Source of the DNA: Haliotis rubra
Taxonomy: Eukaryota
Direction of reading: 5' to 3'
Length of the DNA stretch: 64,000 nt
NCBI RefSeq assembly: GCF_003918875.1
Contig: NW_025764992.1
Coordinates: forward strand, 2,108,001 to 2,172,000
Part shown: in pieces, positions 3,800 to 57,364 of the stretch
Numbering within the stretch: the stretch's first letter is position 1
Layout of the letters: each line of letters opens with the position of its first letter
Made by a program: the position numbers and the translations under genes
The notes under the pieces: model-generated
Told to the model about the DNA's origin: nothing
The model's database searches: none
What the model saw: the letters and a program-made list of their open reading frames with translations, nothing else

Positions 3800-5437
3800 C
3801 AGTATTGTACTGGCTGACTTGCTTCAGGTTGTAACCCTGCCTCCCAGTATTGTACTGGCTGACTTGCTTCAGGTTGTAACCCTGCCTCCCAGTATTGTAC
3901 TGGCTGACTTGCTTCAGGTTGTAACCTTGCTTCCAGTTGTAACCCTGCCTCTCTTGCCTCCCAGTGTTGTAGTGGCTGACATGCTTCAAGTTGTCACCCT
4001 GCCTCCCAGTGTTGTAGTGGCTGACTTGCTTCAGGTTGTAACCCTGCCTCCCAGTGTTGTAGTGGCTGACGTGCTTCAAGTTGTCACCCTGCCTCCCAGT
4101 GTTGTAGTGGCTGACTTGCTTCAGGTTGTAACCCTGCCTCCCAGTGTTGTAGTGGCTGACTTGCTTCAGGTTGTAACCCTGCCTCCTGACAGCTTCAGGT
4201 TGTAGTGGCTGACTTGCTTCAGGTTGTAACCCTGCCTCCCAGTGTTGTAGTGGCTGACTTGCTTCAGGTTGTAACCCTGCCTCCCAGTGTTGTAGTGGCT
4301 GACTTGCTTCAGGTTGTCACCCTGCCTCCCAGTGTTGTAGTGGCTGACTTGCTTCAGGTTGTAACACCCTGCCTCCCAGTAGTGTTGTGTTGCTGACTTC
4401 CCAGTGTTGTAGTGGGTTGTAACTTGCCTGCCTCCCAGTGTTGTAGCCTCCCAGTGTTGTAGTGGCTGACTTGCTTCAGGTTGTAACCCTGCCTCCCAGT
4501 GTTGTAGTGGCTGACTTGCTTCAGGTTGTAACCCTGCCTCCCAGTGTTGTAGTGGACTGACTTCTGCCTCAGGTTGTAACCCTGCCTCCCAGTGTTGTAG
4601 TGGCTGACTTGCTTCAGGTTGTAACCCTGCCTCCCAGTGTTGTAGTGGCTGGCTGACTGCTTCAGGTTGTAACCCTGCCTCCCAGTGTTGTAGTGGCTGA
4701 CTTGCTTCAGGTTGTAACCCTGCCTCCCAGTGTTGCTTCAAGGTTGTAGCCTCCCAGTGGTTGTCTGACTTGCTTCAGGTTGTAACCCTGCCTCCCTGTG
4801 TTGTTGTGGCTGACTTGCTTCAGGTTGTAACCCTGCCTCCCAGTGTTGTAGTGGCAGTGTTGTAGTGACTTGCTTCAGGTTGTAACCCTGCCTCCCAGTG
4901 TTGTAGTGGCTGACTTGCTTTCAGGTTGTAACCCTGCCTCCCAGTGTTGTAGTGGCTGACTTGCTTCAGGTTGTAGTGGTTGACCCTGCCTCCCAGTGTT
5001 GTAGTGGCTGACTTGCTTCAGGTTGTAACCCTGCCTCCCAGTATTGTAGTGGCTGACTGTTGTAGCCTCCCAGTGTTGTAGTGGCTGACTTGCTTCAGGT
5101 TGTAACCCTGCCTCCCAGTCCCAGTGTGACGTGCTTCAAGTTGTAACCCTGCCTCCCAGTGTTGTAGTGGCTGACTTGCTTCAGGTTGTCACCCTGCCTC
5201 CCAGTGTTGTAGTGGCTGACTTGCTTCAGGTTGTAACCCTGCCTCCCAGTGTTGTAGTGGCTGACTTGCTTCAGGTTGTCACCCTGCCTCCCAGTGTTGT
5301 AGTGGCTGACTTGCTTCAGGTTGTAACCCTGCCTCCCAGTGTTGTAGTGGCTGACTTGCTTCAGGTTGTAACCCTGCCTTCCTGTGTTGTCCTGACTTGC
5401 TTCAGGTTGTCACCCTGCCTCCCAGTGTTGTCCTGGC
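3800..5437. repeat. 45-bp minisatellite (cccagtgttgtagtggctgacttgcttcaggttgtaaccctgcct)n, about 35 units
   Basis: Directly visible. It accounts for the periodic ORFs at 3717-5505. The central part (about 4370-5130) is scrambled. Confidence 0.97.
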
Positions 5438-7586
5438 TAATATCAATATTTATGTTCAACAAACTAATACAGGTAGTATTTCATGGTATAGTTCCTGCAA
5501 TTTAATGATTTATATAAATTGAATCGATCCTGTGCATAGCTTTATTGACAATTTTGTGAGCATTATGACAAAAAGAATAAACATAAAGATATTGTACACT
5601 AGGTTCATTTGTTTACTTTTTCTGCGACAAATGTAATGCAGGTTATGGATTGTTTGCTGGTGTTATTGCTGCACACCGCATGTGTCGTGTGTTCTTGTTG
5701 TCTCTCATTGAAGTCAGGACTGAGAGTGAAACATGGCTGCATCTCCAGGCACACATGCCATTACATTGTTTTGACAACAGGTTGGCCTCTCACATAGTGT
5801 CAGTGCATGGCGTTGTCACCATATCTACCTGGATGCAATGTGTGGCTCTTGTTAAAAAACACCACCTTACTCGGCAGTGATTGTGGCATGAAATATTGAG
5901 CCCTTAACTGTTGAAAAACAGATGTTCGTTGCCGCTTGTTAATGATCAATTTGCATGGTTAAAGTCTCTCAGTGGTAACCTATGGTAGCTGCACTAGTCA
6001 AATTCTACTTAACATGGCTAAGTGTTGACAAGGAAAATGTAAATTGCATGTTATCAGATTTGTTTTCAGCTCATTGTTTCTAGGGTCAAATTTCTTTTTT
6101 TGCTGTGCTCATTACAGCCTTGAAGGTTTTAAATGGAGGATTTGACATTATGTCGGTGCAAGGTTATGTAGGAGTTATTGGTGACTTGCTGATACGTGAA
6201 CTGCATGCTTTGACTGTGAGATTCTGGAATAAATACGATAGCCATTGTAGGACCATACACGTCACGGCTTAGTGCCACTGTTGCCTTACTTTGAAGCTGA
6301 GCTGTGAAAGGAAGTTGGGAAAGATTATAAACACTGTCATGTATACCTGTATGTTCACAGATTGAAAGGTAATTCAATGTAATTATGTCTTGTTGAGTGC
6401 TATACCAGGACGTGTAGCCGTTCAATAATAGACTACGGGTTGAGTGGCCAGATAGTGATTCTCGTACACCCTATTCTGTGCATGTGGAGGTCTTCAGGGA
6501 AATCTTGTGTGGAAAGGTTATGAAATATTTGAGTAAGTGTGGTGGTGGTGATCAGGTTGTAATTCCTTGGAGGTGAGTGCTGTCACGGAGGCATTCATCA
6601 ACTCCGACGTTACACGCTCTGACAATCACTCTAGATTTATGAACAGCTCTTATTTGAGAGCTATAGGTATGGGGATATTTGGCAAGTAAATTAAGTGATT
6701 GCAGTGTTTTGAAGGATTTGATCGGTCAAATCTTGACGGTCTGTTATTGTGCTGAGTTGGAGAGAACAGAACAGGTAGGGGTCAAGTCAGTTTCTTATTG
6801 ACTAGCATGCTGGGAGATTAGGCGTGGATTTACTGCTTTATGGAGGTGTGTTTTGGGTTGACTCCATATCTAAGCTGCTATTCACAATGGTGTAAGCTCT
6901 CAGTGGGTAATCAACCAAACATTCCTTGCACTTGGAGTTGTTAAATAGATTTTGTTTTCAGTCTGTTTTGTACATGTTGTTCAAATAATATGTTGTTTTG
7001 AACACTGTGAAGTATCCATTGCTCATCAATTTGCTGATGTTAATGAAATTGGTTTTCTATGAAAGAAAATCATGTAATTTGTATTGAACACTTTTCGTTT
7101 AGAAAATTCTTAAGATATTATATTATCATTTCATGATCCATTATTATGTTATTGGACTGGTAATCATGTTTATCATGTTTTATCTTACCATACACAGGAA
7201 TGTAAGATTCTCGTTAAATGAGAACTATTCTTATATTTTCCATGCTCACATGTAAAATATATTTGTTATATTCCCAGTTTTACTGACAAAATGTCGACAT
7301 GATATTTGCAAAATAGCATCATCTATTTTATATATTTTGATGTAGGACACATTGCTCTAGATGTTTATACTATTTTCAGAAGGAATTAGATATAAGTGGA
7401 ATAGCTCCAGGTTTGTTTTCTGCCACATGAAAGTGAGTAAATGTGTAACCATGGTATTCTTATGGATATGCACCAAAGCATTACCTTCAATATAACTATG
7501 TGTGAGGTAACATCACTTCATTGTCCACTGATCCCTTGTGTGTCCCTTAAAACCAATGTACAACTTGTAATTTATCAGTGGTATAT

Positions 7587-8480: not shown

Positions 8481-11296
8481 TCATATTTCCAAGGAAAGAA
8501 TTCCCACCAAAATTGTGTCACCTGTATGCCAATACCATTGAATGCAACATGTGACTATGTTTTGGATGCCGATAAACACCAATTCATTATTTACCTTTGT
8601 GTTAATGTTTTTTCCAGAGTGAACTAATTGTAGGTATTTTGGTGGTGGTGGTTTACGAGCAACTACTTAAGCAGTTAGGTGGGGCATTAAATATTCCTAG
8701 GTTGTAGCTCAGTAACCTGGTACAATCTGATCCTGAGCTTGTCGCACACAGATTGCTGATAAGTCCACAAGCCAATGCAGTGGGACTATATTGCCAGTAC
8801 ACCAAATTACTGCACACTTCACCTGGCACAAATCACTGGTAGGTTTCAACCACCAGACATGTACCAGTACGCCAAGCAATCTGAAGACACCTCACCTGTA
8901 TGACAGTCTGACTTTGATGTTGTTATCTCTCTGAACTAGCCATTCTGGGGAGCCATGTGTGTAATTGCCCTTGAATCGATGAGGTACATGATTTGATTAA
9001 CACTTGTTAAATCCTCTCGGCCGAGACACACTGGTGGGCAGGGACATAGTATTTGAATGTAGTATCCCTCCGAACTACAGATTTTATGTTAGGGTTATGG
9101 CTAGGATAAAAAATGCTTTTCATGCTTTATTTTAAACACTGGCATTTTACTTGATTAGCTTGGTTTAGGTATTTTATGACCTTGAAATTCAGGAATGTGG
9201 GTGAAAAAAATCTGATAAATTTATTGTTTTTTATAACTTTCCAATCTCAAAACGTTTAGAGATAACAGAATGTAAATATTTTGTATGTAATTTTATTGAT
9301 GGTTATTTTTTTAAATGGTTATTGATACAAAAATCTGTAGACCAAAATAAAATGGAATTACAGTTGTTGACATCAGCGATATTAATGTCAAGAGTTCCTG
9401 TCATTTGCTTTTTCATGGTTTAATTCATATCATTGTTGTCACTACCATGGTCGCCAACAGTGACTGGTATTAGTTGTTTGGCTGTCGTTCTGTAGATCTG
9501 GGTTAAGAAAACATTCTGAAAGATTCCAACATACTCTCCAGTCAGTGACTCTTTAGTACAATGGTTTGATTTGTTTACAAAATATATCAAAAGTTAGAAT
9601 TACAAAGAAAGCCTTTAATATTTTAATATGGACCGCTGCTGTTCCCCATATCATATTTATAATCATTGACAGCTGATTCATCATTTCATATTTGTTGAAG
9701 ATATTGAAATAGTCAATGGGCTTACTACAAATGTGTAGTGCCTTATAACATGTACAGATAGACTCGTGTTCCTCCTCTTGAAATGTGGCCTTATACACAG
9801 TGTAAATAGTGCTTTTGATATTTCAGCCAGGATAAGCACATGATAAGAGAACGTTATTTTCAAGAAGTATGTATGAGCAGCCTGTTGCGAACAGTTATTC
9901 TACTATTTCACTATTTTCACCTTGTTGTGCTGCCATCTTGTCCAGTTCAAAGTAGTGGAGTAACTTGGTCTGAACTTGTTCAACTCGTATAAAATAGTCC
10001 ACTCCCTTATTGGAAATGTTAATGTTGTTAGTGGAACTGAGATGTTTGTTCAGACAGGTTAGTAATGGACTGCTCGGCTATTTCTGAAGTCAGTCACCAA
10101 AGGGGCACCCCTTCCCTCAACAAACATGCACCTACAATAGGTTAAAAGGGTTATACAACTTATGGCAATTTTATCAAGCAGTTTACGCATTTGTCTACAT
10201 ACGGTAAGAATAGGTTGAGATTATTTTTTTCTGGCAAGCTTGTGCCTCAGTTGTGTATGTAAATAGTTTCTGTATTGATCAAATGCATCAAAAGCATTCA
10301 CTCTAATGAGGTAAGGTATTACTGCTATTTTCAACTGTTTACCTTGAGTGTTGAATTTTCATAAATAGCCGAGTCAAATTGCCGACTTAAGTCCATGTCT
10401 TGACTTGGTTGGGAGAAAACGTTCTTGGGGATATCAGAATGTGTTTGTACATGATCTTTCCCAGTTATGTAAAAGAGATATTTTAGTTTCACTAGTCCAC
10501 AAAAACCTTTTGCCAGTAAAGTAAGTGCTAGTTTATAAAAATACATGAAAGTCAAGGGGACCTTGATGTACTGTCAAAAATGATAGATTTATGTGGCCCT
10601 AGATTAAAGTAGTAAAGTGTAAATTCATGCTAAACATAATGAATAAGGAGTTAAAGGTACCTATATGTGTTATACCAAATATATAGGTGTCGTGCCATGC
10701 AGCAACTCTGTAGTATTGTATGTGTGGAGTACATTCAGGAGTGTTTGGAAAGCGTTGAGCCTGGTTTACATACAGTATTTAAATGCTGACATTTTCTAGT
10801 TGAGGTATTGTTTCCCTGCCTAAGCTGGGTCACCTAGCCAGCCAAGTAGGATTATCGTAAGCAATGGTGAGTGAGAGTTTCCAATAGCTAGGGCAGTAGT
10901 ATATCACTGACTTTACTAGCAAGACCCAACATGTAGAACAATGACTTGTAACGCCTTTGCTTATGTCTGTATTTCTCATGTGTTTCATGAACATTGGGGA
11001 TGTGTTTCTGCTTGCGTGAACATTGTTGTTTTAGAAATGTGAATTAATGGTTTCTAACTTGAGTTAATTTCATGGTTTCTATAAGAGATGTGGCTTATTG
11101 TATTCTGGTACACCTATGTCACTGAGTTGAGCCAACAAATGATGGCTTGTTCCTGTGTGCCTGATTCTGTGCTGAGGTTTGTCAACTTGAATATGTTTTG
11201 TATGTTAAAATACTTCAGTGTTGATCTAAGTTAGGTGTTACTTGTTGACATGTTTACTTTATACTTGATTGTTGTGCATGTTGTAGGCTTGATAAA

Positions 11297-12160
11297 TGTT
11301 ACTGGCTTCAGTGGAATGTTACTAGCATCAGTGGAATGTTACTAGCGTCAGTGGATTGTTACTAGCATCAGTGGAATGTTACTAGCGTCAGTGGAATGTT
11401 ACTAGCATCAGTGGAATGTTACTAGCATCAGTGGAATGTTACTAGCATCAGTGGAATGTTACTAGCATCAGTGGAATGTTACTAGCATCAGTGGAATGTT
11501 ACTAGCTAGCGTCAGTGGAATGTTACTAGCATCAGTGGAATGTTACTAGCGTCAGTGGAATGTACTAGCATCAGTGGATTGTTACTAGCATCAGTAGAAT
11601 GTTACTGGCATAAGTGTTTACTAGCCAGTGGAATGTTACTAGCGTCAGTGGATTGTTACTAGCGTCAGTAGAATGTTACTGGCATAAGTGGAATGTTACT
11701 AGCATCAGTAGATTGTTACTGGCTTCAGTGGAATGTTACTAGCGTCAGTGGATTGTTACTAGCTTTGTAATGTTACAAGCTGTGTATAATGCACTGGTAC
11801 CTGGTTGAGTCACAATGCAATGTTTCTTACCACAGTTTTACTTATCTCAATGCCTTGTTACTAGCCTTGATGTAGTATTTCTAGCTTCGGTGCATTGTTA
11901 CTGGTTTCAGTGCAGTGGTATTAGCTCTAATGCAGTGTTACTAGCCTCAATGCACTGTATCTAACTTCAGTGCATTGTTACTTGCCTTAATGCTCTGTTA
12001 CTAGCTACAGTGCTGTTACTTGCCTCAAAGCATTGTTACTTATTTTAATGCACTGTTACTCACATAAATGTATTAGCCATAATTCAGTGTTAATGGCCAC
12101 AATTCAGCATTACTAGCCACAGAACATTTTAATAAGTCTCAGTGCAGTGTTACTAGCCTC
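11297..12160. repeat. 20-bp minisatellite (tgttactagcatcagtggaa)n with a degenerate tail of about 21-bp period
   Basis: Near-perfect units 11297-11763, then decayed tgttactagc-containing units to about 12160. Confidence 0.93.
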
Positions 12161-48461: not shown

Positions 48462-51400
48462 ATGGTGAGGAGTATGACTTGTTCTTCCAAAATCTGTGTT
48501 CATCCTGAGCATTGAGTTACCAACATTCTTAATCATGACCAAGTTTAAATCTCTATTCTCGACATTACTCACCTGGCAATATATTACTATCACCGGATCT
48601 TTAATTATGCCGATATGGTATCGTTTTTGACTGCTGTGTAGTGACATAAACATCTGCACCTGGACGAGTTTGGTCGAAAATACACCGCGTAAATTCGGAC
48701 AGTTTGTGTTAATATCATGATAACAAAGTTTCCACACACGAAAAGATTTAAAGTCGCTTAATATCTAGAATGAACATGCTTCTGTTTTTCAAATGGACTG
48801 AAAAACAATTGAATTGCAAGTTGAGTTGGTTACTTATTGCACACCCAAAAGATACCGGTCTTGATCAGAATCGCTATAATGCGGATTGTGGAATGTTGTG
48901 TCGAACCCAGATCCCAGGGTATAGATAATCTTACTTTTGCATTGGTATTTTGTAGATTATACCAGTTGACAGACAACTTCGTTTGAGACAAGTAGATTGG
49001 GGTATGAGCTAGTCAGAGTATTCTACATGAAGTATCCATTTTTGAAACATTATGAAATTTATAGTAATGCTCTTCAAAATGCCCAAGTAATCTGGTGTAT
49101 GCTAATGTGAGGGCGAATTTTTGACACTCTTGCAGATTATATGCTTTCATTTTAGTAAATCCTAAGATCGTAATGTGGATCCAATCCCTTAATATCTAGA
49201 ATCACAATGGAGAAAAGAACACTTCAAGAAGGTTTGAAAATCAAAGAGCTAAAGAATTTTACTTCAGCTCAATGATTTAGATTTTGGTGTAAAAGCTTAT
49301 ATAAGACTAAAAGAATGCTAGTGCACATTTTAAATGTTTAAACCTTGATTCACTGTCCTCAGTCAAACAGTCCTTGAGGTTTGCACCTATGTCACTTGAA
49401 CACAGCACCCGTTAAATCTTATAGCAATGGGGTATTGACGTACACATTACATTGGAACCATCTGATTGTTTTTAGGTGAATATCCCGAAACAGAGGAGGA
49501 CCTTCTGCAGAGGAAGGGAATGCAAGAAACACACCATGCACAAAGTCACCCAGTATAAGGCTGGCAAAGCCTCCCTCTATGCCCAAGGTACAGGACTGTT
49601 TCACTTTCAGATATATGGAAAAAAGTATTTCAGAATTGACACACAAGGATTATTGGCTCTTGAGTACTCGTCAGTTGAGAGTGTGTAGTGTTCATTCTTA
49701 TACATAAAGAGGAAGGACCATCTGTGGCCACAGGAGACAAAAACTACTTTGGGATCCTTTTGTCATCCAGAAGTGCCAGAGTGCCAAAATTTCATGATCC
49801 GTCTCAGTTGAATTTAATTTCTTGTGCTTAAAGCACATTTAAGGAATTGCTACTGCTAGCAGTCAAGGAAATATAGCCACTTTTGCAGTATTTCCCAAGT
49901 CATGACAACTATCATAGTGTTTTTTGTGTGTTTTTCCTAAATTAATATGAATGGGAGTCTATTTTTTACTGTTTCATCACAAAATTAATTTTCTCCTTAG
50001 CAGACTTGCCTATCCTTATGATTTTGGCGTAAGACTTACTATTTTTGGTGCTAAGTTACGACCTTATGAATATGATCATACTGAAATTTGTACGACTTCT
50101 ACAAATAAATGGTAGAATACTAGATATAGACATGCCCATGCTATTTATAGAGTCATTTACGGTACAAAAAGTACAGAAAAATAGAAGTCACATCAAAAAC
50201 ATAAATAAATAATTTTTCTACCTTACAGTGCTGGTAAAGTTTATTTCAAAGTTGAAGACTTTAAAAAACGTAATTAGATTGGCACCACATTTTACTATTT
50301 AACACTATGTTAACATATTAACTAGCAATGTTCTTACTTTATTTCTTGACATTAATCTGTCTTACTATCAGATGCCCCTGCCTTACCATTTTTTTTTAGC
50401 TGATCTTACTATTTTCTTTAAAATGGGGTAGGCAAGTCTGCTGTAGATTCTTCATTTCAGTAAAAAAACCTCAGTTGTATCTAAAAGACCTTTGATAACA
50501 CTGCTCAGTTGAACATTTGTTTTCAAAAGTCTGTTTTTCAAACCATCCTTCCAGCACAACTGTGCCTCTCTGGAATCTGTTGTCTTGGTGTCAACTGAGT
50601 CACAGATAAAGACAGAGATGGTGGTGCAATGGAAGAAGATGAATTGAGCATTTCATGAGTTAATGATTTCACTTGGACCTCTTTCTCAATGTCCAGTAGT
50701 GAGATCTGTTACATGAGTGCAACATATTGACCAAGTATGAGGTAGTTTAAATGTTGTTTAACAAGAATTAAAGTATTTTTAAATCAAACCATACCTACTG
50801 CAGGAAATCTGTTTGCTGAATGTTTAATTTTGTTTTTATTTTCTTTTAAAAATTCTTATGTCTCTAAACTGTAGTGTCATACGTATTAGCAAATCCACAC
50901 TATCGTGTTTGTTTAAACTTTTGTCATCCCGTCTATAACAATTTCAGTGGAATTTCCTTACTTTCTTGCATTATCATCTTCAGTACTGTTTTTGCCCAAA
51001 TAACCTGTTACGTCCGGTATTAGAGAACAAGGCCCCCTTTTTCTCTCTGTTGAAAGGGTGTGAAGAACAATGTTTAACCATTTGCTTGAATCTTTCCTGT
51101 GCTTTTTGATTTTTAAACTAAGTTTTTTGGTGGTGTATCCATCTTTTCTGTCTGAGCCTGAAATCCATACCACTTCCTTGGGTATGCTTTCATACTATCA
51201 CCCATGTTTCTTGTAGGCTGGAGGTACGAATGTCACTCATCACAAAAGCAAACAAGGAACTAAAACAGCTAAAGTTCGAAAAAAAACCCAGCTGCTCAGA
51301 AAGTTGTATTAGTCATGAATGCAGAACAATCATAGTTAATTAGTTACATTATTGAATGGGAGTCTAGTTTTTACAGTTTCAGGGCAAGATGTTTTATGAT

Positions 51401-54400
51401 TTTGCCTTTTTGTTTCAAATGGTTACAATTTAGTATTGTCCTTCAAGCACAACTGTGCCTCTCTGGAATCTGTTGTCTTGGTGTCAACTGAGTCACAGAT
51501 AAAGACAGAGATGGTGGTGCAATGGAAGAAGATAAATTTATATCACTTCATGAGTTAATGATTTCACTTGGACCTCTTTCTTAATGTCCAGTGACGGCCT
51601 CCGTGGTGTAGTGGTTAGAGCGTCCGCCCGGAGAGCGGAAGGTCGCGGGTTCGATCCCCGACCGCGTCATACCAAAAGACGTTAAAATATGGTACTTGTT
51701 GGTCCCTGCCTGGCGCTCGACATTAATGGGTACAACAAGGACTGGTCGGCTCGGAGTCAGTATAATGTGTCTGAGTGGGGTATTCATGCTTCACTGCGGC
51801 ATGGTATTTCAGTGGGCTAGCACTATAAAACCAGCTTCAGTCTGGGCTAGTACAAGCAGCCGCACATACACATACACACGCATGCACGTCGTCATATGAG
51901 CGAAATATTCTCAAGTACGACGTTAAACCCAATTTCACTTCACCTCACCTCACCTCTTAATGTCCAGTAGTGAGATCTGTTACATGAGTGCAACATATTG
52001 ACCATGAGTAGATTAAACGATATATTAAATATGAATTAAAGTGTATTTTCTAATCCAACCATACCTACTGGGTGAAATATGTAATACATTTTAAAAAAAA
52101 ATATTTCCAATATTTTCTTTGTCTCTGAAATGTAGCATCATACTTGTCAGCTAATACACATTATCATGTGTTTCATCACATCTATGACAATTCCATTTGA
52201 TTTAACTTGCTTTTAATGGATTATCTAAGTATAAGTAGATCAAACGGTAGATTAAACATGATTTAAAGAATATATTTAATGCAGCTATGCGTATCTGAGA
52301 AATATTTTGTCCATCTGACGTGTTTTATAACATTTTCCTGAATGTCTAGACTGTAATTGACATTTTACCTAATACACACTAACATTGTTGTGTTAACTGT
52401 TCCACAGTCTGATATTGCCAGTAGATTCTCCATTCTTCATGAAAGTCATAATCTTGTTTATTCTGTTTCATCTGTACAGGTAAGAGGCGATACGACAGAA
52501 AACAGTCTGGATATGGTGGTCAGACCAAGCCTATTTTCCACAAGAAGGTAACTAAAACTGGAGACACATTTGTGCAACCTGAATTAGCTTCATCTTGATG
52601 AGAGCAAATTTTGTGCTTTCATTTGTGTAACAATATAGAGTAGTCTTTTTTAATTGAAATATTTGTCATAATTTTATATTGAGTTTGTAAATTTGGATAA
52701 TTGATAATCCTGACTAAGCACTTAATTTCCTTTTACCCAATTCTTCCCTGTGTTATAGGGACTGTTAGCCCTGTTTTGCATGGTTTACTCATATTCTGCC
52801 TACATCTCATTCTGCCTACAGACATGATAAAAGTGTAGGCAGAATGAGAAAAATCAGGTCACCTCTAATTTAGAAATGGACTTGTCCGTGACATAACATA
52901 ACAGAATCTTGATTGTATTCATATTTTATTTATATTAGATAACATGATATATAGACATTTGTATCGATGTTTGCATCGTCAACTACACAATACGAGTGCA
53001 TCGATACAAAACACATTTAGGCAATATATCAGGATATTTATATCGTGAGGGTCCAAGATACATCGATGTATCGTCACAAGAGACGTTATATTCCAATACA
53101 ACTAAAATACTACCTATTGCATTAGGAATAGGAAGGGAGTCTCTTTGAAATTCTTCTGAATTTTAATAACAAATTGAACCTTATAGGAATTTGTTTGTGT
53201 CTGATATATTTGTAACAGGAACGAAGGAGTTGGTGTATAAGTGAAAGAGTGAACATTTTTCAAACTCTTGAGAATTGTAGAATAGTTGTTTTCAAGTAAC
53301 TGAAATATGTTTTAGTTTGACAAATAACACCATTTAACAAACTCTGAGAATTGTAGAATAGGTATACTGAATGTTTGTACTTTCTTAAGCATTAAATGCT
53401 GAAACTTTATTAGATGAACTTTATTAGAAATCTGTATCGTCATTCATTGTAGATTGCTCATGGTTTGTTCAATATATTATTGAATATTTTAGACTTGTCT
53501 GTGTTCTATTTTGCTGGTTCAAAGGTGACTTTTACACCTTTTGTCAAGGCAAATTATTAACAGTAACAATGTTACATTTGACCACTTTCTAAAATGGCAT
53601 TGTATATTTAATAAGAAAACAGTTAGTAACAAAAACATAAGAATGTCCATATAACAAGGAAGAATCAAGCAGTCCACTTATCCAAACAACTCAAACCAAA
53701 AACCGAACACAAAAAAAAAACAAGTCACAAAAAAAAATCAAGCTCTTCCATTTTTTCTTGTGGGGAGGAAGGGTCAAGTATTATCTATAGCTTTCTCATT
53801 CTGCCTACACACTTGTGACCAGCAGACCATGACGTGTGTTGTTTTTAGCTGTAGGCAGAATGAGCTGTAGGCAGAATGAGAGGACACCTTTTGCATGATA
53901 AGTGTGTCCTATTAGCAGTAATGAAAACAGTGAAATAAATTAGCTTGATCATGTCACCGCATACTGTGTTTAGTAAACAAATATTGAAAACTCTCAACAT
54001 GGCTGTGGTTATTCCATGACAATGGTTGTGTAGAAGAAAGATCACTAAGAGGAGCTTATGCACACTCAATTACCCCTGCAATGGGGTCATGTCACAAGAC
54101 ATCGTTTTTGTGTTTTGGCAAGGAAATATCACAAATGAGCCTAATATGACATGTTTATAATGTTTTTGGTGCTGAAATCTAAGGCTTGATCTAATCAGAC
54201 TTTCAGAATTGTGGAAGGACGTGAAATTTTCTTTATGATTTTTTTGTCCCACAGAACATTTGAATATATTTTGTTTCTTGCGTTCAGGCAAAAACTACCA
54301 AGAAGATTGTACTTCGTATGGAATGCAGCCAGTGCAAATACAGGAAACAGCTCTCCCTAAAGCGCTGCAAGCACTTCGAGTTGGGTGGTGACAAGAAGAG

Positions 54401-55068
54401 GAAGGTATGTAGTTGGGGAGGGTCTGGGCAGTTATGTCCCTTGGAGGAGTTAGATGTTCATGTGCAGCGTTGCTGTTGTAGTAGGGAATCGACAACCCCC
54501 TCAAGTGTTTCATAAACATTGGGGTTTATAAAGCTCAATAACATCTGAGAATGTTTGATATCCTGTAAAGTTTTGCCTTTTTGTTTCAAATGTTTACAAT
54601 GTAGGATTGTCCTTCCAGCACAACTGTGCCTCTCTGGAATCTGTTGTCTTGGTGTCAACTGAGTCACAGATAAAGACAGAGATGGTGGTGCAATGGAAGA
54701 AGATGAATTTAGCATTTCATGAGTTAATGATTTCACTTGGACCTCTTTCTTAATGTCCAGTAGTGAGATCAGTTACATGAGTGCAACATATTGACCAAGT
54801 ATGAGTAGATTAAACGATAGATTAAATATGAATTAAAGTGTATTTTCTAATCCAACCCTACCTTCTGGGTGAAATACGTCCAGTTGTGAGATCTGTTATG
54901 TGAGTGCAACAGACAACACAGTGCTAATTCATCTCTTTCACGAGTAGCATATGATGCATTAGAAATTAACAGCTAATGTCTTCAGATATATGATATAGCG
55001 TTTGAATCCAAAATTCTTTTCTAATACTGTGCCTTTTTGTTTTGCAGGGCCAGATGATCATGTTCTAG
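48462..55068 (+). CDS. RPL36A: 60S ribosomal protein eL42 (L36a/L44), 106 aa. Exons 48462-48464 (ATG only), 49476-49587, 52480-52547, 54288-54404, 55048-55068
   Basis: [20 protein letters not shown]...[39 protein letters not shown]...[21 protein letters not shown]. All junctions are GT-AG and in frame. Pyrimidine-tract initiator upstream and AATAAA at 55096-55101. Confidence 0.97.
49999..50442. mobile_element. MITE-like element in RPL36A intron 2
   Basis: TIR agcagacttgcctatcc / gggtaggcaagtctgct. Confidence 0.65.
50547..50727 (+). ncRNA. Intronic box H/ACA snoRNA, copy 1 (possibly SNORA81-like), RPL36A intron 2
   Basis: Hairpin 1 (cttcca/tggaag, gcac/gtgc, tctctg/cagaga, atctgt/acagat). 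H box AGATGA at 50637-50642. Hairpin 2 (gcat-tcatg/catgagtgc, gatttcact/agtgagatc, tggac/gtcca). ACA at 50722-50724, 15 nt from the base of the upper stem. Sense-strand in a ribosomal protein intron and conserved in three copies. Confidence 0.8.
51440..51998 (+). pseudogene. H/ACA snoRNA copy 2, disrupted by a SINE insertion (51593-51954)
   Basis: Same sequence as copy 1 but split at the apex of hairpin 2 by a SINE with duplicated target tcttaatgtccagt (51579-51592 and 51955-51968). Also has stem-breaking substitutions (cttcca>cttcaa, gcatttc>tcacttc). Confidence 0.75.
51593..51954 (+). mobile_element. tRNA-derived SINE, family B, inserted in snoRNA copy 2
   Basis: Full length with A/B boxes and (cacct)n tail. 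TSD up to 14 bp. Confidence 0.92.
52788..53880. mobile_element. Non-autonomous DNA transposon with repeated subterminal motifs, RPL36A intron 3
   Basis: Motif ctcattctgcctaca is arranged forward-forward-reverse at the left end (52788-52850) and forward-reverse-reverse at the right end (53792-53880), a mirror image. Confidence 0.7.
54611..54791 (+). ncRNA. Intronic box H/ACA snoRNA, copy 3, RPL36A intron 4
   Basis: Near-identical to copy 1 (about 3 substitutions). H box AGATGA and ACA (54786-54788) are intact. A diverged 3' fragment follows at 54878-54914. Confidence 0.8.
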
Positions 55069-55140: not shown

Positions 55141-55295
55141 GGGGCAGTGGGGTAGCCTAGTGGTTAAAGTGTTCGCTCGTGACATGACCGGAGTTAGATT
55201 CCCCACATGGTTACATATGCGAAGCCCATTTCTGGTGTCACCCACAGTGATATTGCTGGAATATTGCTTAAAGTGGTGTTAAACTAAACTCACTC
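55141..55295 (+). mobile_element. SINE family A just downstream of the RPL36A polyA site
   Basis: A/B boxes and tail are recognisable. It contains the left breakpoint of the 1.07-kb duplication. Confidence 0.8.
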
Positions 55296-57364
55296 TTTGC
55301 ATGATGGGGTGTGTGAGAGTACTAGAGAGGCCTTCACAGTAACGAGAACTTGATTGCCTTAATGGCTGCCAGATGTTAATGTTTAATTCAGTTCACACCA
55401 GTCAATAATTGCTGATTGGTACAGAGACTACTGAGAAGTGTCTTCAAGATACTGGTTTACTGGCATGGCAGATGAATATACTTGTAGCTGTTCTATTACC
55501 GGGACTGCTTCAATCCAATACACCTAACTCAACTTGTATGCTGCAGTTTGTAATACTTCTGATTTCATGACGGAGGGTATAATTAGTACAGACAACATAT
55601 TCAAACATTTCATTCAAAACAGATGAATCTTCACATAGGTATGTGTTGGTTTCTGGGTTTGTGCTAAGAGGCAATCAAATGGATCAGGCTGTGACTTAGT
55701 TGTCTGCATGGGATGCAGCTCATATCAGTCACTGGATTGTCTCCACCTGACTTGAGTATTTACTGGCCATTGTATATGTATACCTGACATCTGTGACATC
55801 TGTACTTCGTGTTTAGTATGAATCTATGGACATGTTCTTTTGCAGCTTTCTCCTTTTGGGAAAAATCACAACTCGACAGCATTCTTCCATTCTTGTTCTG
55901 GAGTAAACTCTGGATTCTAGCACGAAAAAGGTAGCTGGAATATTGCGGAGTGTCATGTTAACAAAAAGTTAAACCCATTGAGATTCTCCTGCAGAACAGA
56001 ATCAGTGGGGTAGCCTTGTGGTTCAAGCGTTAGCTCGTAACATCGAAGGCCTGAGTTCAATTCCCCACATAGGTACAATGTGTGAAGCATATTTCTGGTG
56101 TCCACCGAGGTGTCGCGAGAGTCATATTGTTGGAATATTGCTAAAAGCAGTGTAAAACTTACCTCACTCATGTAGAATAGTTGATTAGCACTGACCTGAA
56201 TGATTCAGATGTTGCTATGATGATCTTAATGATCATGCTATCAACCAGTGGTTTACCAGTATAAACAAATTACAGGTGGAAACCTGAAGCCCATTTCTGG
56301 TGTCACCCACAGTGATATTGCTGGAATATTGCTTAAAGTGGTGTTAAACTAAAATCACTCTTTGCATGATGGGGTGTGTGAGAGTACTAGAGAGGCCTTC
56401 ACAGTAACGAGAACTTGATTGCCTTAATGGCTGCCAGATGTTAATGTTTAATTCAGTTCACACCAGTCAATAATTGCTGATTGGTACAGAGACTACTGAG
56501 AAGTGTCTTCAAGATACTGGTTTACTGGCATGGCAGATGAACATACTTGTAGCTGTTCTATTACCGGGACTGCTTCAATCCAGTACACCCAACTCAACTG
56601 GTATGCTGCAGTTTGTAATACTTCTCTGATTTCATGACGGAGGGGTATAATTAGTACAGACAACATATTCAAACATTTCATTCAAAACAGAGATGAATCT
56701 TCACATAGGTATGTGTTGGTTTCTGGGTTTGTGCTAAGAGGCAATCAAATGGATCAGGCTGTGACTTAGTTGTCTGCATGGGATGCAGCTCATATCAGTC
56801 ACTGGATTGTCTCCACCTGACTTGAGTATTTACTGGCCATTGTATATGTATACCTGACCTGTGCTGACATCTGTACTTCGTGTTTAGTATGAATCTATGG
56901 ACATGTTCTTTGCAGCTTTCTCCTTTTGGGAAAAATCACAACTCGGACAGCATTCTTCCATTCTTGTTCTGGAGTAAACTCTGGATTCTAGCACGAAAAA
57001 GGTAGCTGGAATATTGTGGAGTGTCATGTTAACAAAAAGTTAAACCCATTGAGATTCTCCTGCAGAACAGAATCAGTGGGGTAGCCTTGTGGTTCAAGCG
57101 TTAGCTCGTAACATCGAAGGCCTGAGTTCAATTCCCCACATAGGTACAATGTGTGAAGCATATTTCTGGTGTCCACCGAGGTGTCGCAGAGTCATATTGT
57201 TGGAATATTGCTAAAAGCAGTGTAAAACTTACCTCACTCATGTAGAATAGTTGATGAGCACTCATGAGTGACCTGAATGATTCAGATGTTGCTATGATGA
57301 TCTTAATGATCATGCTATCAACCAGTGGTTTACCAGTATAAACAAATTACAGGTGGAAACCTGA
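55221..57364. repeat. Tandem duplication of about 1.07 kb (55221-56285 and 56286-57364)
   Basis: Second copy restarts at gaagcccatttctggtgtcacccacag and ends at caggtggaaacctga. The copies differ only by a few substitutions and small indels. Confidence 0.93.

What the first reader, a model, noticed from the sequence alone, without database searches (positions are those of the whole stretch)
50547..54914. Triplicated 181-nt H/ACA snoRNA hosted in RPL36A introns (candidate invertebrate SNORA81-like or orphan guide)
Seen: three near-identical 181-nt blocks (50547, 51440, 54611) plus a 3' fragment (54878). All are sense-strand and fold as hairpin, H box (AGATGA), hairpin, ACA, with 15 nt from pocket to ACA. 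Copies 1 and 3 differ at about 3 positions while the flanks of copy 1 have diverged, which points to selection on the RNA. Established: ribosomal protein genes are typical snoRNA hosts, and 181 nt is long for an H/ACA RNA. Recalled but unverified: the apex GGACCUCUUUCUUAAUGUCC, the length and the GUGCAA end resemble vertebrate SNORA81, which is hosted in EIF4A2. That would mean deep conservation with a host-gene switch.
Basis: partly seen in the sequence, partly recalled or inferred. Interest (0 to 1): 0.75.

Follow-up and report, generated by a model that had tools for sequence, protein, structure and literature searches.

The report
Mollusc SNORA81-like snoRNA in eL42 introns
Two intact copies, one broken copy and one fragment of a 181-nt pseudouridine-guide-type RNA (box H/ACA snoRNA) lie in introns of an abalone-like ribosomal protein gene (eL42/RPL36A); the same RNA sits in the same gene in a scallop and a snail and is a distant relative of vertebrate SNORA81, so it is a real but ordinary kind of gene with an unusually old, unexplained conserved loop.

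Summary
The repeat is real. Copies 1 and 3 are intact and 178/181 identical, while their flanks match at only about 60-80%. Copy 2 is split by a tRNA-derived SINE and carries further changes. A 37-nt 3' fragment follows copy 3. These are the only copies in the 1.38 Gb genome, all in sense inside eL42/RPL36A (introns 2 and 4).

The RNA has the full box H/ACA layout. The decisive evidence is comparative. The eL42 genes of Pecten maximus, Batillaria attramentaria and an unnamed ENA assembly carry 2-4 copies of the same RNA, always including the last intron. In a 9-sequence alignment, 34 of 57 base pairs show compensatory changes.

Abalone copies score only 21-24 bits against Rfam SNORA81 (cut-off 45). 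The scallop orthologues reach 40-41 bits (E about 1e-5). All share the invariant 3' apical loop C(U/G)CUUUCU(U/C/G)AAUG with vertebrate SNORA81.

The SNORA81 guide is poorly kept. Only 4+4 bp, with odd spacing, fit the homologous 28S uridine (U3406). A stable RNA and its target remain unproven. The scan had not noted this family before. Verdict: new member of a known kind, moderate interest.

The parts
50547..50727 (+). snoRNA copy 1, intact, in eL42 intron 2. H box at 50637-50642, apical stem-loop at 50675-50694, ACA at 50722-50724.
   Evidence: model R1, 180 bits
51440..51592 (+). snoRNA copy 2, 5' part (RNA positions 1 to about 151). H box changed to AGAUAA and the basal stem of hairpin 2 is altered. 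Pseudogene.
51593..51954 (+). tRNA-derived SINE inserted into the apex of hairpin 2 of copy 2. Target-site duplication tcttaatgtccagt at 51579-51592 and 51955-51968.
   Evidence: (tRNA model 28 bits at 51597-51669)
51955..51998 (+). snoRNA copy 2, 3' part (43/44 identical to copy 3), including the duplicated target site.
   Evidence: (family D7)
54611..54791 (+). snoRNA copy 3, intact, in eL42 intron 4 (the last intron). H box at 54701-54706, apical stem-loop at 54739-54758, ACA at 54786-54788. The A at 54771 is private to this assembly; all four laid runs read T.
   Evidence: R1, 183 bits
54878..54914 (+). 3' fragment of a further copy (31/37 identical to RNA positions 145-181). Absent, together with 54791-54927, from a related species' DNA contigs.
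   Evidence: (joint 54790 to 54928 in run X16)
49476..49587 (+). eL42/RPL36A exon 2 ([10 protein letters not shown]...SLYAQ, phase 1 at its end).
52480..52547 (+). eL42 exon 3 ([22 protein letters not shown]).
54288..54404 (+). eL42 exon 4 ([15 protein letters not shown]...GGDKKRK).
   Evidence: PF00935 proteins at 90-97% identity
55048..55068 (+). eL42 last coding exon (GQMIMF plus stop).

Best explanation
The unit is a box H/ACA snoRNA gene, released from eL42/RPL36A pre-mRNA introns. It belongs to a family that has lived in this host gene since before gastropods and bivalves split, and that is homologous to vertebrate SNORA81.

Shown here:
- The two-hairpin, H box, ACA architecture is kept by compensatory changes across four mollusc taxa.
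- The family sits in eL42 introns; intron 4 carries a copy in all four taxa, and intron 2 in three.
- A 3' apical loop is invariant and is shared with the SNORA81 consensus.
- In this window two copies are intact, one was killed by a SINE, and one is a stump.

Inferred:
- The intron is spliced out, and dyskerin-type H/ACA proteins bind the nascent RNA and protect a roughly 181-nt RNA ending 3 nt after ACA.
- The most likely activity (about 40%) is guiding pseudouridylation of 28S helix 96 U3406, the homologue of human psi4606/4636, the SNORA81 site. The 5' hairpin would do this through short arms: AGCA at positions 7-10 and GUGCAA at positions 78-83.
- The invariant apical loop must serve some further, unknown purpose.
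- Paralogues within a species stay 88-98% alike while taxa differ by about 40%. This implies purifying selection plus gene conversion between introns.
For: - Repeat and copy number.
- Fold and boxes.
- Sharp conservation limits in other species' contigs (54602/54610 to 54788/54791, about 97% identity, flanks unlike).
- Orthologues in eL42 introns of Pecten (L027), Batillaria (L032) and ERZ25074796 (L025).
- Covariation: 34 of 57 pairs changed on both sides. 93.2% of cells are paired against 33-45% when the partners are slid. 0 of 500 shuffles reach the observed value.
- The G119-C160 pair is invariant and lies exactly 15 nt before ACA. The ANANNA positions of the H box are invariant.
- SNORA81 is the top Rfam family: 20.6-23.7 bits for abalone with a 22-nt identical apex, and 40.2-40.8 bits with E about 1e-5 for scallop.
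- With guide ends fixed at positions 10 and 77/78, U3406 is the only rRNA uridine with at least 4+4 bp.
- U3406 is the best LSU match to the vertebrate consensus guide and lies 31 nt after the sarcin-ricin adenine.
- Human target data.
Against: - No copy reaches the Rfam gathering score of 45 bits.
- No RNA ends or small-RNA reads were seen. The laid contigs carry intron flanks and may be pre-mRNA or DNA.
- The proposed guide is short (3-4 bp on one arm).
- The two arms are complementary to each other, and one scallop copy changes both sides together, as a helix would.
- 6-8 unpaired guide nucleotides separate the 5' arm from the upper stem.
- The guide geometry was chosen after seeing the match. 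Under a relaxed rule, 25 rRNA sites pass against 28 expected by chance.
- Blind scans of rRNA, U2 and U5 gave nothing above the shuffled controls.
- eL42 genes of Aplysia, Solemya, an annelid, a bryozoan, a sea urchin and a coral lack the RNA. The link between molluscs and vertebrates therefore has no intermediate taxa.
Confidence: 0.78

Rival explanations
1. It is the same H/ACA RNA, but in molluscs it no longer guides any pseudouridine. Selection would act on the invariant 3' apical loop (and on RNP assembly), so that it works as a non-guide H/ACA RNA that binds a conserved protein or RNA partner.
For: - Both 'pockets' are largely closed by helices that covary or vary, and the 3' pocket sequences differ between taxa.
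- No significant rRNA, U2 or U5 target was found.
- The loop is the only long unpaired stretch that is invariant from scallop to the vertebrate consensus, while its closing stem covaries.
Against: - The invariant arm residues (G8, A10, C11, G78, U79, C81, A83) do fit the flanks of the SNORA81 target uridine.
- No partner for the loop was found. The longest complement in the rDNA unit is at chance level.
- MFE-type folds often close real pockets.
Confidence: 0.33
2. It is a mollusc-specific H/ACA snoRNA unrelated to SNORA81. The shared apical loop and similar length would be convergence or chance.
For: - Abalone scores are sub-threshold. At 21-26 bits a whole-genome scan gives chance hits; L014 scores 26 bits but has no H/ACA fold.
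- The host gene differs.
- The 5' hairpin aligns poorly and ambiguously to the model.
Against: - The scallop orthologues reach 40-41 bits, with E 5e-4 in a 58-kb scan of all families and about 1e-5 locally. SNORA81 is the only snoRNA family hit.
- A 16-22-nt identical loop lies at the same place in an RNA of the same length and class.
- Shared CCUUC 5' end, AGCA arm and GAAGAAGA hinge.
Confidence: 0.12
3. It is a duplicated intron segment or mobile element with no RNA function, kept similar only by recent duplication or gene conversion.
For: - The flanks of the copies are homologous, so whole segments were duplicated.
- Paralogues cluster by species.
Against: - Only four matches exist in 1.38 Gb, all in this gene.
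- The RNA is conserved in four taxa that are about 40% diverged, with 34 compensatory pairs and conserved boxes.
- Conservation stops at the RNA ends.
Confidence: 0.03

Closest known systems
SNORA81 (Rfam RF01241; HBI-61), vertebrate box H/ACA snoRNA in an EIF4A2 intron that guides 28S psi4606 (psi4636 in the newer numbering) in helix 96
   Same: - About 180 nt with two hairpins.
- The 3' apical loop CCUCUUUCUUAAUG is identical.
- 5' end CCUUC, AGCA in the 5' guide strand, and a GAAGAAGA hinge.
- ACA or AUA box 3 nt from the end.
- Best Rfam family for both the abalone and the scallop copies.
- The arm residues still fit the homologous uridine.
   Different: - Below the Rfam cut-off.
- The host is eL42/RPL36A, not eIF4A (no other copy in the abalone genome).
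- 2-4 copies per gene rather than one.
- Three extra nucleotides lie between the 5' arm and the upper stem.
- The 3' arm sequence is different, as is the rRNA it would face (GGUACA in abalone).
- The guide is at best 8-10 bp.
Multi-copy intronic H/ACA snoRNA clusters of invertebrates (for example those noted elsewhere in this genome in FAM199X and PAK1IP1)
   Same: - Several sense copies in introns of a translation-related host.
- More than one per intron.
- Near-identical paralogues.
   Different: - Here the copies lie in different introns of one small ribosomal protein gene.
- The same introns are occupied in a bivalve, which points to concerted evolution rather than fresh duplication.
Non-guide H/ACA RNAs with conserved loop elements (U17/snR30 m1-m2 motifs; CAB-box scaRNAs)
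   Same: An H/ACA RNA whose most conserved unpaired element is not a canonical pocket.
   Different: - The element is a terminal loop of the 3' hairpin, not an internal loop.
- No CAB box (UGAG) is conserved in a terminal loop.
- No rRNA complement was found.

Membership tests
box H/ACA snoRNA | Hairpin, hinge, hairpin, tail architecture | tested here: met
   MFE folds of copies 1 and 3. Consensus fold of 9 sequences from 4 taxa: 57 pairs, 34 with compensatory changes, 93% of cells paired against 33-45% in the slid controls.
box H/ACA snoRNA | H box ANANNA in the hinge, and ACA (or a variant) 3 nt from the 3' end | tested here: met
   H box is AGAUGA, AGAGUA, AGAUCA, AGAUAA or AAGCA-type, with A91, A93 and A96 invariant. 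ACA is present in 7 of 9 sequences and AUA in 2, always followed by 3 nt up to the limit of conservation. The mature 3' end itself was not observed.
box H/ACA snoRNA | Upper-stem base 14-16 nt upstream of the H and ACA boxes | tested here: met
   The invariant G119-C160 pair lies 15 nt before ACA. The C19-G75 pair lies 15 nt before the H box.
box H/ACA snoRNA | Open bipartite pocket complementary to a target uridine context | tested here: inconclusive
   Predicted folds close both pockets. No target scored above the shuffled controls in blind scans. A short, oddly spaced match to LSU U3406 was found.
box H/ACA snoRNA | Stable RNA bound by dyskerin/NHP2/NOP10/GAR1 | not testable with these tools
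   Only Logan contigs were available. They include intron flanks and show no RNA ends.
SNORA81 (RF01241) | Score at or above the Rfam gathering threshold (45 bits) | tested here: not met
   Abalone copies score 20.6, 21.6 and 23.7 bits. Scallop orthologues score 40.2 and 40.8 bits, with E 1.2e-5 to 1.6e-5 in the local search.
SNORA81 (RF01241) | Conserved 3' hairpin apical loop CCUCUUUCUUAAUG closed by a short stem | tested here: met
   A 22-nt exact match to the model consensus in copies 2 and 3. The loop is invariant across molluscs except at two positions, and the closing stem covaries.
SNORA81 (RF01241) | 5' hairpin guides pseudouridylation of 28S helix 96 U4606/U4636 | tested here: inconclusive
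   The homologous uridine exists (LSU U3406, 31 nt after the sarcin-ricin adenine). The abalone arms give 4+4(5) bp there and nowhere else under that geometry, but the spacing is non-canonical and was chosen post hoc. The modification state is unknown.
SNORA81 (RF01241) | Hosted in an EIF4A2 intron | tested here: not met
   All copies lie in eL42/RPL36A. The same host is used in scallop, Batillaria and ERZ25074796.
scaRNA (Cajal-body H/ACA) | CAB box UGAG in a terminal loop | tested here: not met
   The UGAG at positions 50-53 lies in a stem, is not conserved between taxa, and is changed in a related species' copy.

The most novel reading that the evidence does not exclude
The part of SNORA81 under the strongest and longest selection would be the terminal loop of its 3' hairpin (C-Y-CUUUCU-N-AAUG), not its pseudouridylation guide. 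This loop has stayed unchanged from scallops to the vertebrate consensus while its closing stem covaries and while the host gene and the guide arms changed. The family would then carry a second, undescribed function: a binding site for a conserved protein or RNA, or a signal for RNP assembly or placement. Such a function could also bear on the growth phenotypes now reported for human SNORA81.
Probability: 0.35. Interest if true: 0.65.

Novelty: new member of a known kind. Interest (0 to 1): 0.45.

Why it matters
- It extends SNORA81, so far treated as a vertebrate snoRNA and now studied for its role in cancer-cell translation, to molluscs. It would not be picked up by annotation that applies Rfam's gathering cut-off, since every copy scores below 45 bits.
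- It gives a clear case of a snoRNA that kept its identity while its host gene changed, from one translation gene to another.
- It shows paralogues in different introns of one gene evolving in concert.
- It singles out an apical loop of unknown function that has been frozen for more than half a billion years (on the usual dating of the protostome-deuterostome split). That loop can be tested directly in the human rescue assays that already exist.
- In itself the gene is an ordinary intronic snoRNA.

Tried and rejected
- **Whole-genome scan with RF01241**. It returned one 26-bit hit (L014, C1035). That hit has no ACA, no two-hairpin fold (z -1.5) and only a partial second copy nearby, so I rejected it as chance.
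- **Apex pattern with up to 3 mismatches in the genome**. It gave 79 hits against 88 for the reversed control. The single 1-mismatch hit outside the locus (L018) has no hairpin context and no SNORA81 hit.
- **Apex pattern in JGI metagenome contigs**. No match. The pattern was written to exclude the vertebrate-type continuation, so that no human sequence would be fetched.
- **Blind H/ACA target scans** of 28S, 18S, 5.8S, U2 and U5 with several pocket definitions. Nothing exceeded the shuffled controls, apart from one marginal 18S U751 match rich in G-U pairs. U1, U4 and U6 were not scanned.
- **LSU U3443**, which by my recalled +37 offset from psi4606 would be the human psi4643 site (guided by SNORA30/37). 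It fits only with 5+5 bp, mostly wobbles, so I rejected it.
- **Complement of the apical loop in the rDNA unit**. At chance level. A 10-of-12 complement to the RNA's own 5' hairpin holds in abalone and ERZ25074796 but not in scallop.
- **Read laying as proof of expression**. The contigs carry intron flanks and show no ends, so this is inconclusive.
- The LSU family search failed once. A sarcin-ricin pattern with a wrong flank found nothing. The first exon-4 reference was one base off.
- **Proteins not on record** for Pomacea, Acanthaster and Acropora.
Full report
**Observation.** The region holds a 181-nt unit at 50547-50727 (copy 1) and 54611-54791 (copy 3).
- The two are identical at 178 of 181 positions. 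Their flanks are homologous but much more diverged: 60 of 100 matches upstream and 75 of 100 downstream.
- The block at 51440 is not intact. It runs to 51592 and is then split by a 362-nt tRNA-derived SINE (51593-51954). The SINE has a tRNA-like head scoring 28 bits and a 14-nt target-site duplication. The snoRNA resumes at 51955-51998.
- Copy 2 also has a changed H box (AGAUAA) and a damaged basal stem in hairpin 2.
- A 37-nt remnant of a 3' end lies at 54878-54914.
- A search of the whole 1.38 Gb assembly finds only these four matches. A search for the apical motif finds no other credible copy. So this is not a dispersed repeat.

**Host gene.** Frame translations give the eL42 (RPL36A/RPL44) exons at 49476-49587, 52480-52547, 54288-54404 and 55048-55068, with normal splice sites.
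- Exon 4 matches Ribosomal_L44 proteins of many animals at 90-97%.
- Copies 1 and 2 lie together in intron 2. Copy 3 and the fragment lie in intron 4. All are in sense.
The protein search used exon 4 by reference, extended into the stop-free start of the intron and scored on the exon part only. Exon mapping in other species was done exon by exon.

**Anatomy.** Both intact copies fold into two hairpins (-60.5 and -61.7 kcal/mol; z -3.3 and -4.1).
- The hinge carries AGAUGA at positions 91-96.
- ACA lies at positions 176-178, followed by three nucleotides.
- The upper stem of hairpin 2 closes with G119-C160, 15 nt before ACA. C19-G75 lies 15 nt before the H box.
- Variants in related species show which candidate is the H box. 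AGAUGA tolerates the changes seen, while the overlapping AGAAGA is broken by one of them.

**Conservation within the genus.** Contigs of four public runs from four coded organisms were laid on intron 4.
- In two organisms the match covers just 54610-54788 and 54602-54791 at about 96-98% identity, and the contig sequence on both sides is unlike the window.
- A closer relative shares the upstream flank but lacks 54791-54927. That is the downstream flank plus the fragment, so that stretch arose or was lost recently.
- All runs read T at 54771, where this assembly has A.
- Three of these runs are probably transcriptomes (45-78 Mb of contigs). However, their contigs include intron flanks and show no ends, so they do not prove a stable small RNA.

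**Conservation across molluscs.** From the eL42 protein hits I fetched the genes of other animals.
- Pecten maximus carries the RNA at L027:10428-10613 (intron 2) and 11426-11609 (intron 4).
- Batillaria attramentaria carries it at L032:4156-4344 (intron 3) and 5360-5548 (intron 4).
- An unnamed ENA assembly (ERZ25074796) carries it at L025:518-707 (intron 2), as decayed pieces in intron 3, and as two copies in intron 4.
- A covariance model built from abalone, ERZ and scallop copies finds the Batillaria copies at E 1e-24 to 1e-27.
- In the nine-sequence alignment, 34 of 57 predicted pairs have changes on both sides that keep the pair. 93.2% of cells pair, against 33-45% when partners are slid. 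No shuffle out of 500 reaches the observed covariation.
- Even with filters off, the model finds nothing in the eL42 loci of Aplysia, Solemya, the annelid Ridgeia, the bryozoan Watersipora, the urchin Diadema or the coral Porites.
- Paralogues are 88-98% identical within a species but only 54-62% between taxa, although they occupy the same introns. In Batillaria the flanks no longer align. This points to selection on the RNA plus gene conversion between introns.

**Relation to SNORA81.** In an E-value scan of the 4.7-kb region against all 4227 Rfam families, SNORA81 is the only snoRNA family that aligns end to end with the unit.
- Scores are 20.6-23.7 bits and model positions 1-179 are covered. 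There is a 22-nt stretch identical to the consensus apex.
- Alone this is weak. A genome-wide scan yields an unrelated 26-bit hit.
- The scallop orthologues, which differ from abalone at about 40% of positions, score 40.2 and 40.8 bits. Their E-values are 5e-4 to 7e-4 in a 58-kb scan of all families and 1.2e-5 to 1.6e-5 locally. Their whole 3' hairpin aligns.
- The loop C(U/G)CUUUCU(U/C/G)AAUG is invariant in molluscs apart from two positions. Its closing stem covaries: GGAC/GUCC, AGAC/GUCU, GAAC/GUUC.
- I therefore take homology with SNORA81 as likely (about 0.8), although the formal Rfam cut-off of 45 bits is not met.

**Target.** Human SNORA81 guides 28S psi4606 (psi4636 in the newer numbering) in helix 96. 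That site is partly modified and is followed by Gm.
- I assembled the species' own rRNAs from contig C1178.
- The vertebrate consensus guide strands, as printed by Infernal, find their best 28S match at U3406. The 5' arm gives 6 bp, but the 3' arm gives only 1 bp because the abalone rRNA reads GGUACA there. U3406 lies 31 nt after the first A of the sarcin-ricin GAGA loop. That this equals the human spacing rests on my memory of the human numbering.
- The mollusc RNAs keep AGCA/UGCA at positions 7-10 and GUGC(A/U)A at positions 78-83. These are complementary to UGCU and to (U)GGUAC on the two sides of U3406-G3407.
- With the guide ends set at positions 10 and 77/78, U3406 is the only uridine in 28S, 18S and 5.8S with at least 4+4 bp. 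About one such site is expected by chance among 1186 uridines.
- The weaknesses are real. I set that geometry after seeing the match. Under a relaxed rule 25 sites pass, against 28 expected. The two arms also pair with each other, and one scallop copy changes both together. Six to eight guide nucleotides would stay unpaired next to the upper stem.
- The 3' hairpin has no pocket sequence conserved between taxa.
- Blind scans of rRNA, U2 and U5 found nothing above the controls.
- I rate 'guides psi at U3406' at about 40% and 'no longer a guide' at about a third.

**History in this window.**
- Copy 3 shares both flanks with copy 2: 42 of 50 positions upstream and 79 of 87 downstream. A segment of roughly 300 nt was therefore copied between introns 2 and 4, leaving the stump at 54878-54914.
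- The SINE then hit copy 2 within the duplicated apex sequence.

- The window has no N.
- Because the apex equals the SNORA81 consensus, the one public-collection pattern scan was written to exclude the vertebrate continuation.

**Verdict.** This is a genuine, conserved, intron-encoded box H/ACA snoRNA family of molluscs, related to SNORA81 and hosted by eL42.
Its interpretation is supported.
- It is a new member of a known kind. The only real puzzle is the deeply frozen apical loop.
- The scan's earlier notes hold nothing on this family. They do show that multi-copy intronic snoRNAs are common in this abalone-like genome.

Noticed in passing
window 51593-51954; also 55145-55185, 56003-56043, 57074-57114: A tRNA-derived SINE family. 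One full insertion with a 14-nt target-site duplication lies inside snoRNA copy 2. Similar tRNA-like heads occur downstream of the gene. Three weak tRNA-model hits lie elsewhere in the window (504, 8140, 25341).
   Followed up: partly
window 55221-57364: A tandem duplication of about 1.07 kb just downstream of eL42 (repeat families D2, D3, D5, D8, D13, D14 at 98-100% identity).
   Followed up: no
window 52771-52857 and 53781-53874 (eL42 intron 3): Two short foldback elements built on the same word (ctcattctgcctaca and its complement). They give weak microRNA-model hits and are probably MITE-like inverted repeats.
   Followed up: no
window 54771: Copy 3 has A here, where copies 1 and 2 and the contigs of all four laid runs have T. 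This is a private allele or an assembly error. With A the upper stem gains one pair.
   Followed up: partly
L027, L032, L025 versus window: Paralogous snoRNA copies in the same eL42 introns cluster by species (88-98% within a species, 54-62% between taxa). This is concerted evolution between introns of one gene.
   Followed up: partly
L025:9945-10134 and 11252-11441: Two copies in the unnamed ENA assembly have AUA instead of ACA, the same variant box as in the vertebrate SNORA81 consensus.
   Followed up: no
window 54743-54754 versus 54670-54681: The apical loop of hairpin 2 is complementary at 10 of 12 positions to the 3' strand of hairpin 1 in abalone and in ERZ25074796. It is complementary at only 8 of 12 in Batillaria and 5 of 12 in scallop, so this is probably a composition effect.
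   Followed up: partly
L014:1501-1671 (G000 C1035:894836-895006, minus strand): A 26-bit full-length SNORA81-model hit with a loosely similar apex but no ACA box and no H/ACA fold. A partial second copy lies 330 nt away. Taken as chance.
   Followed up: yes
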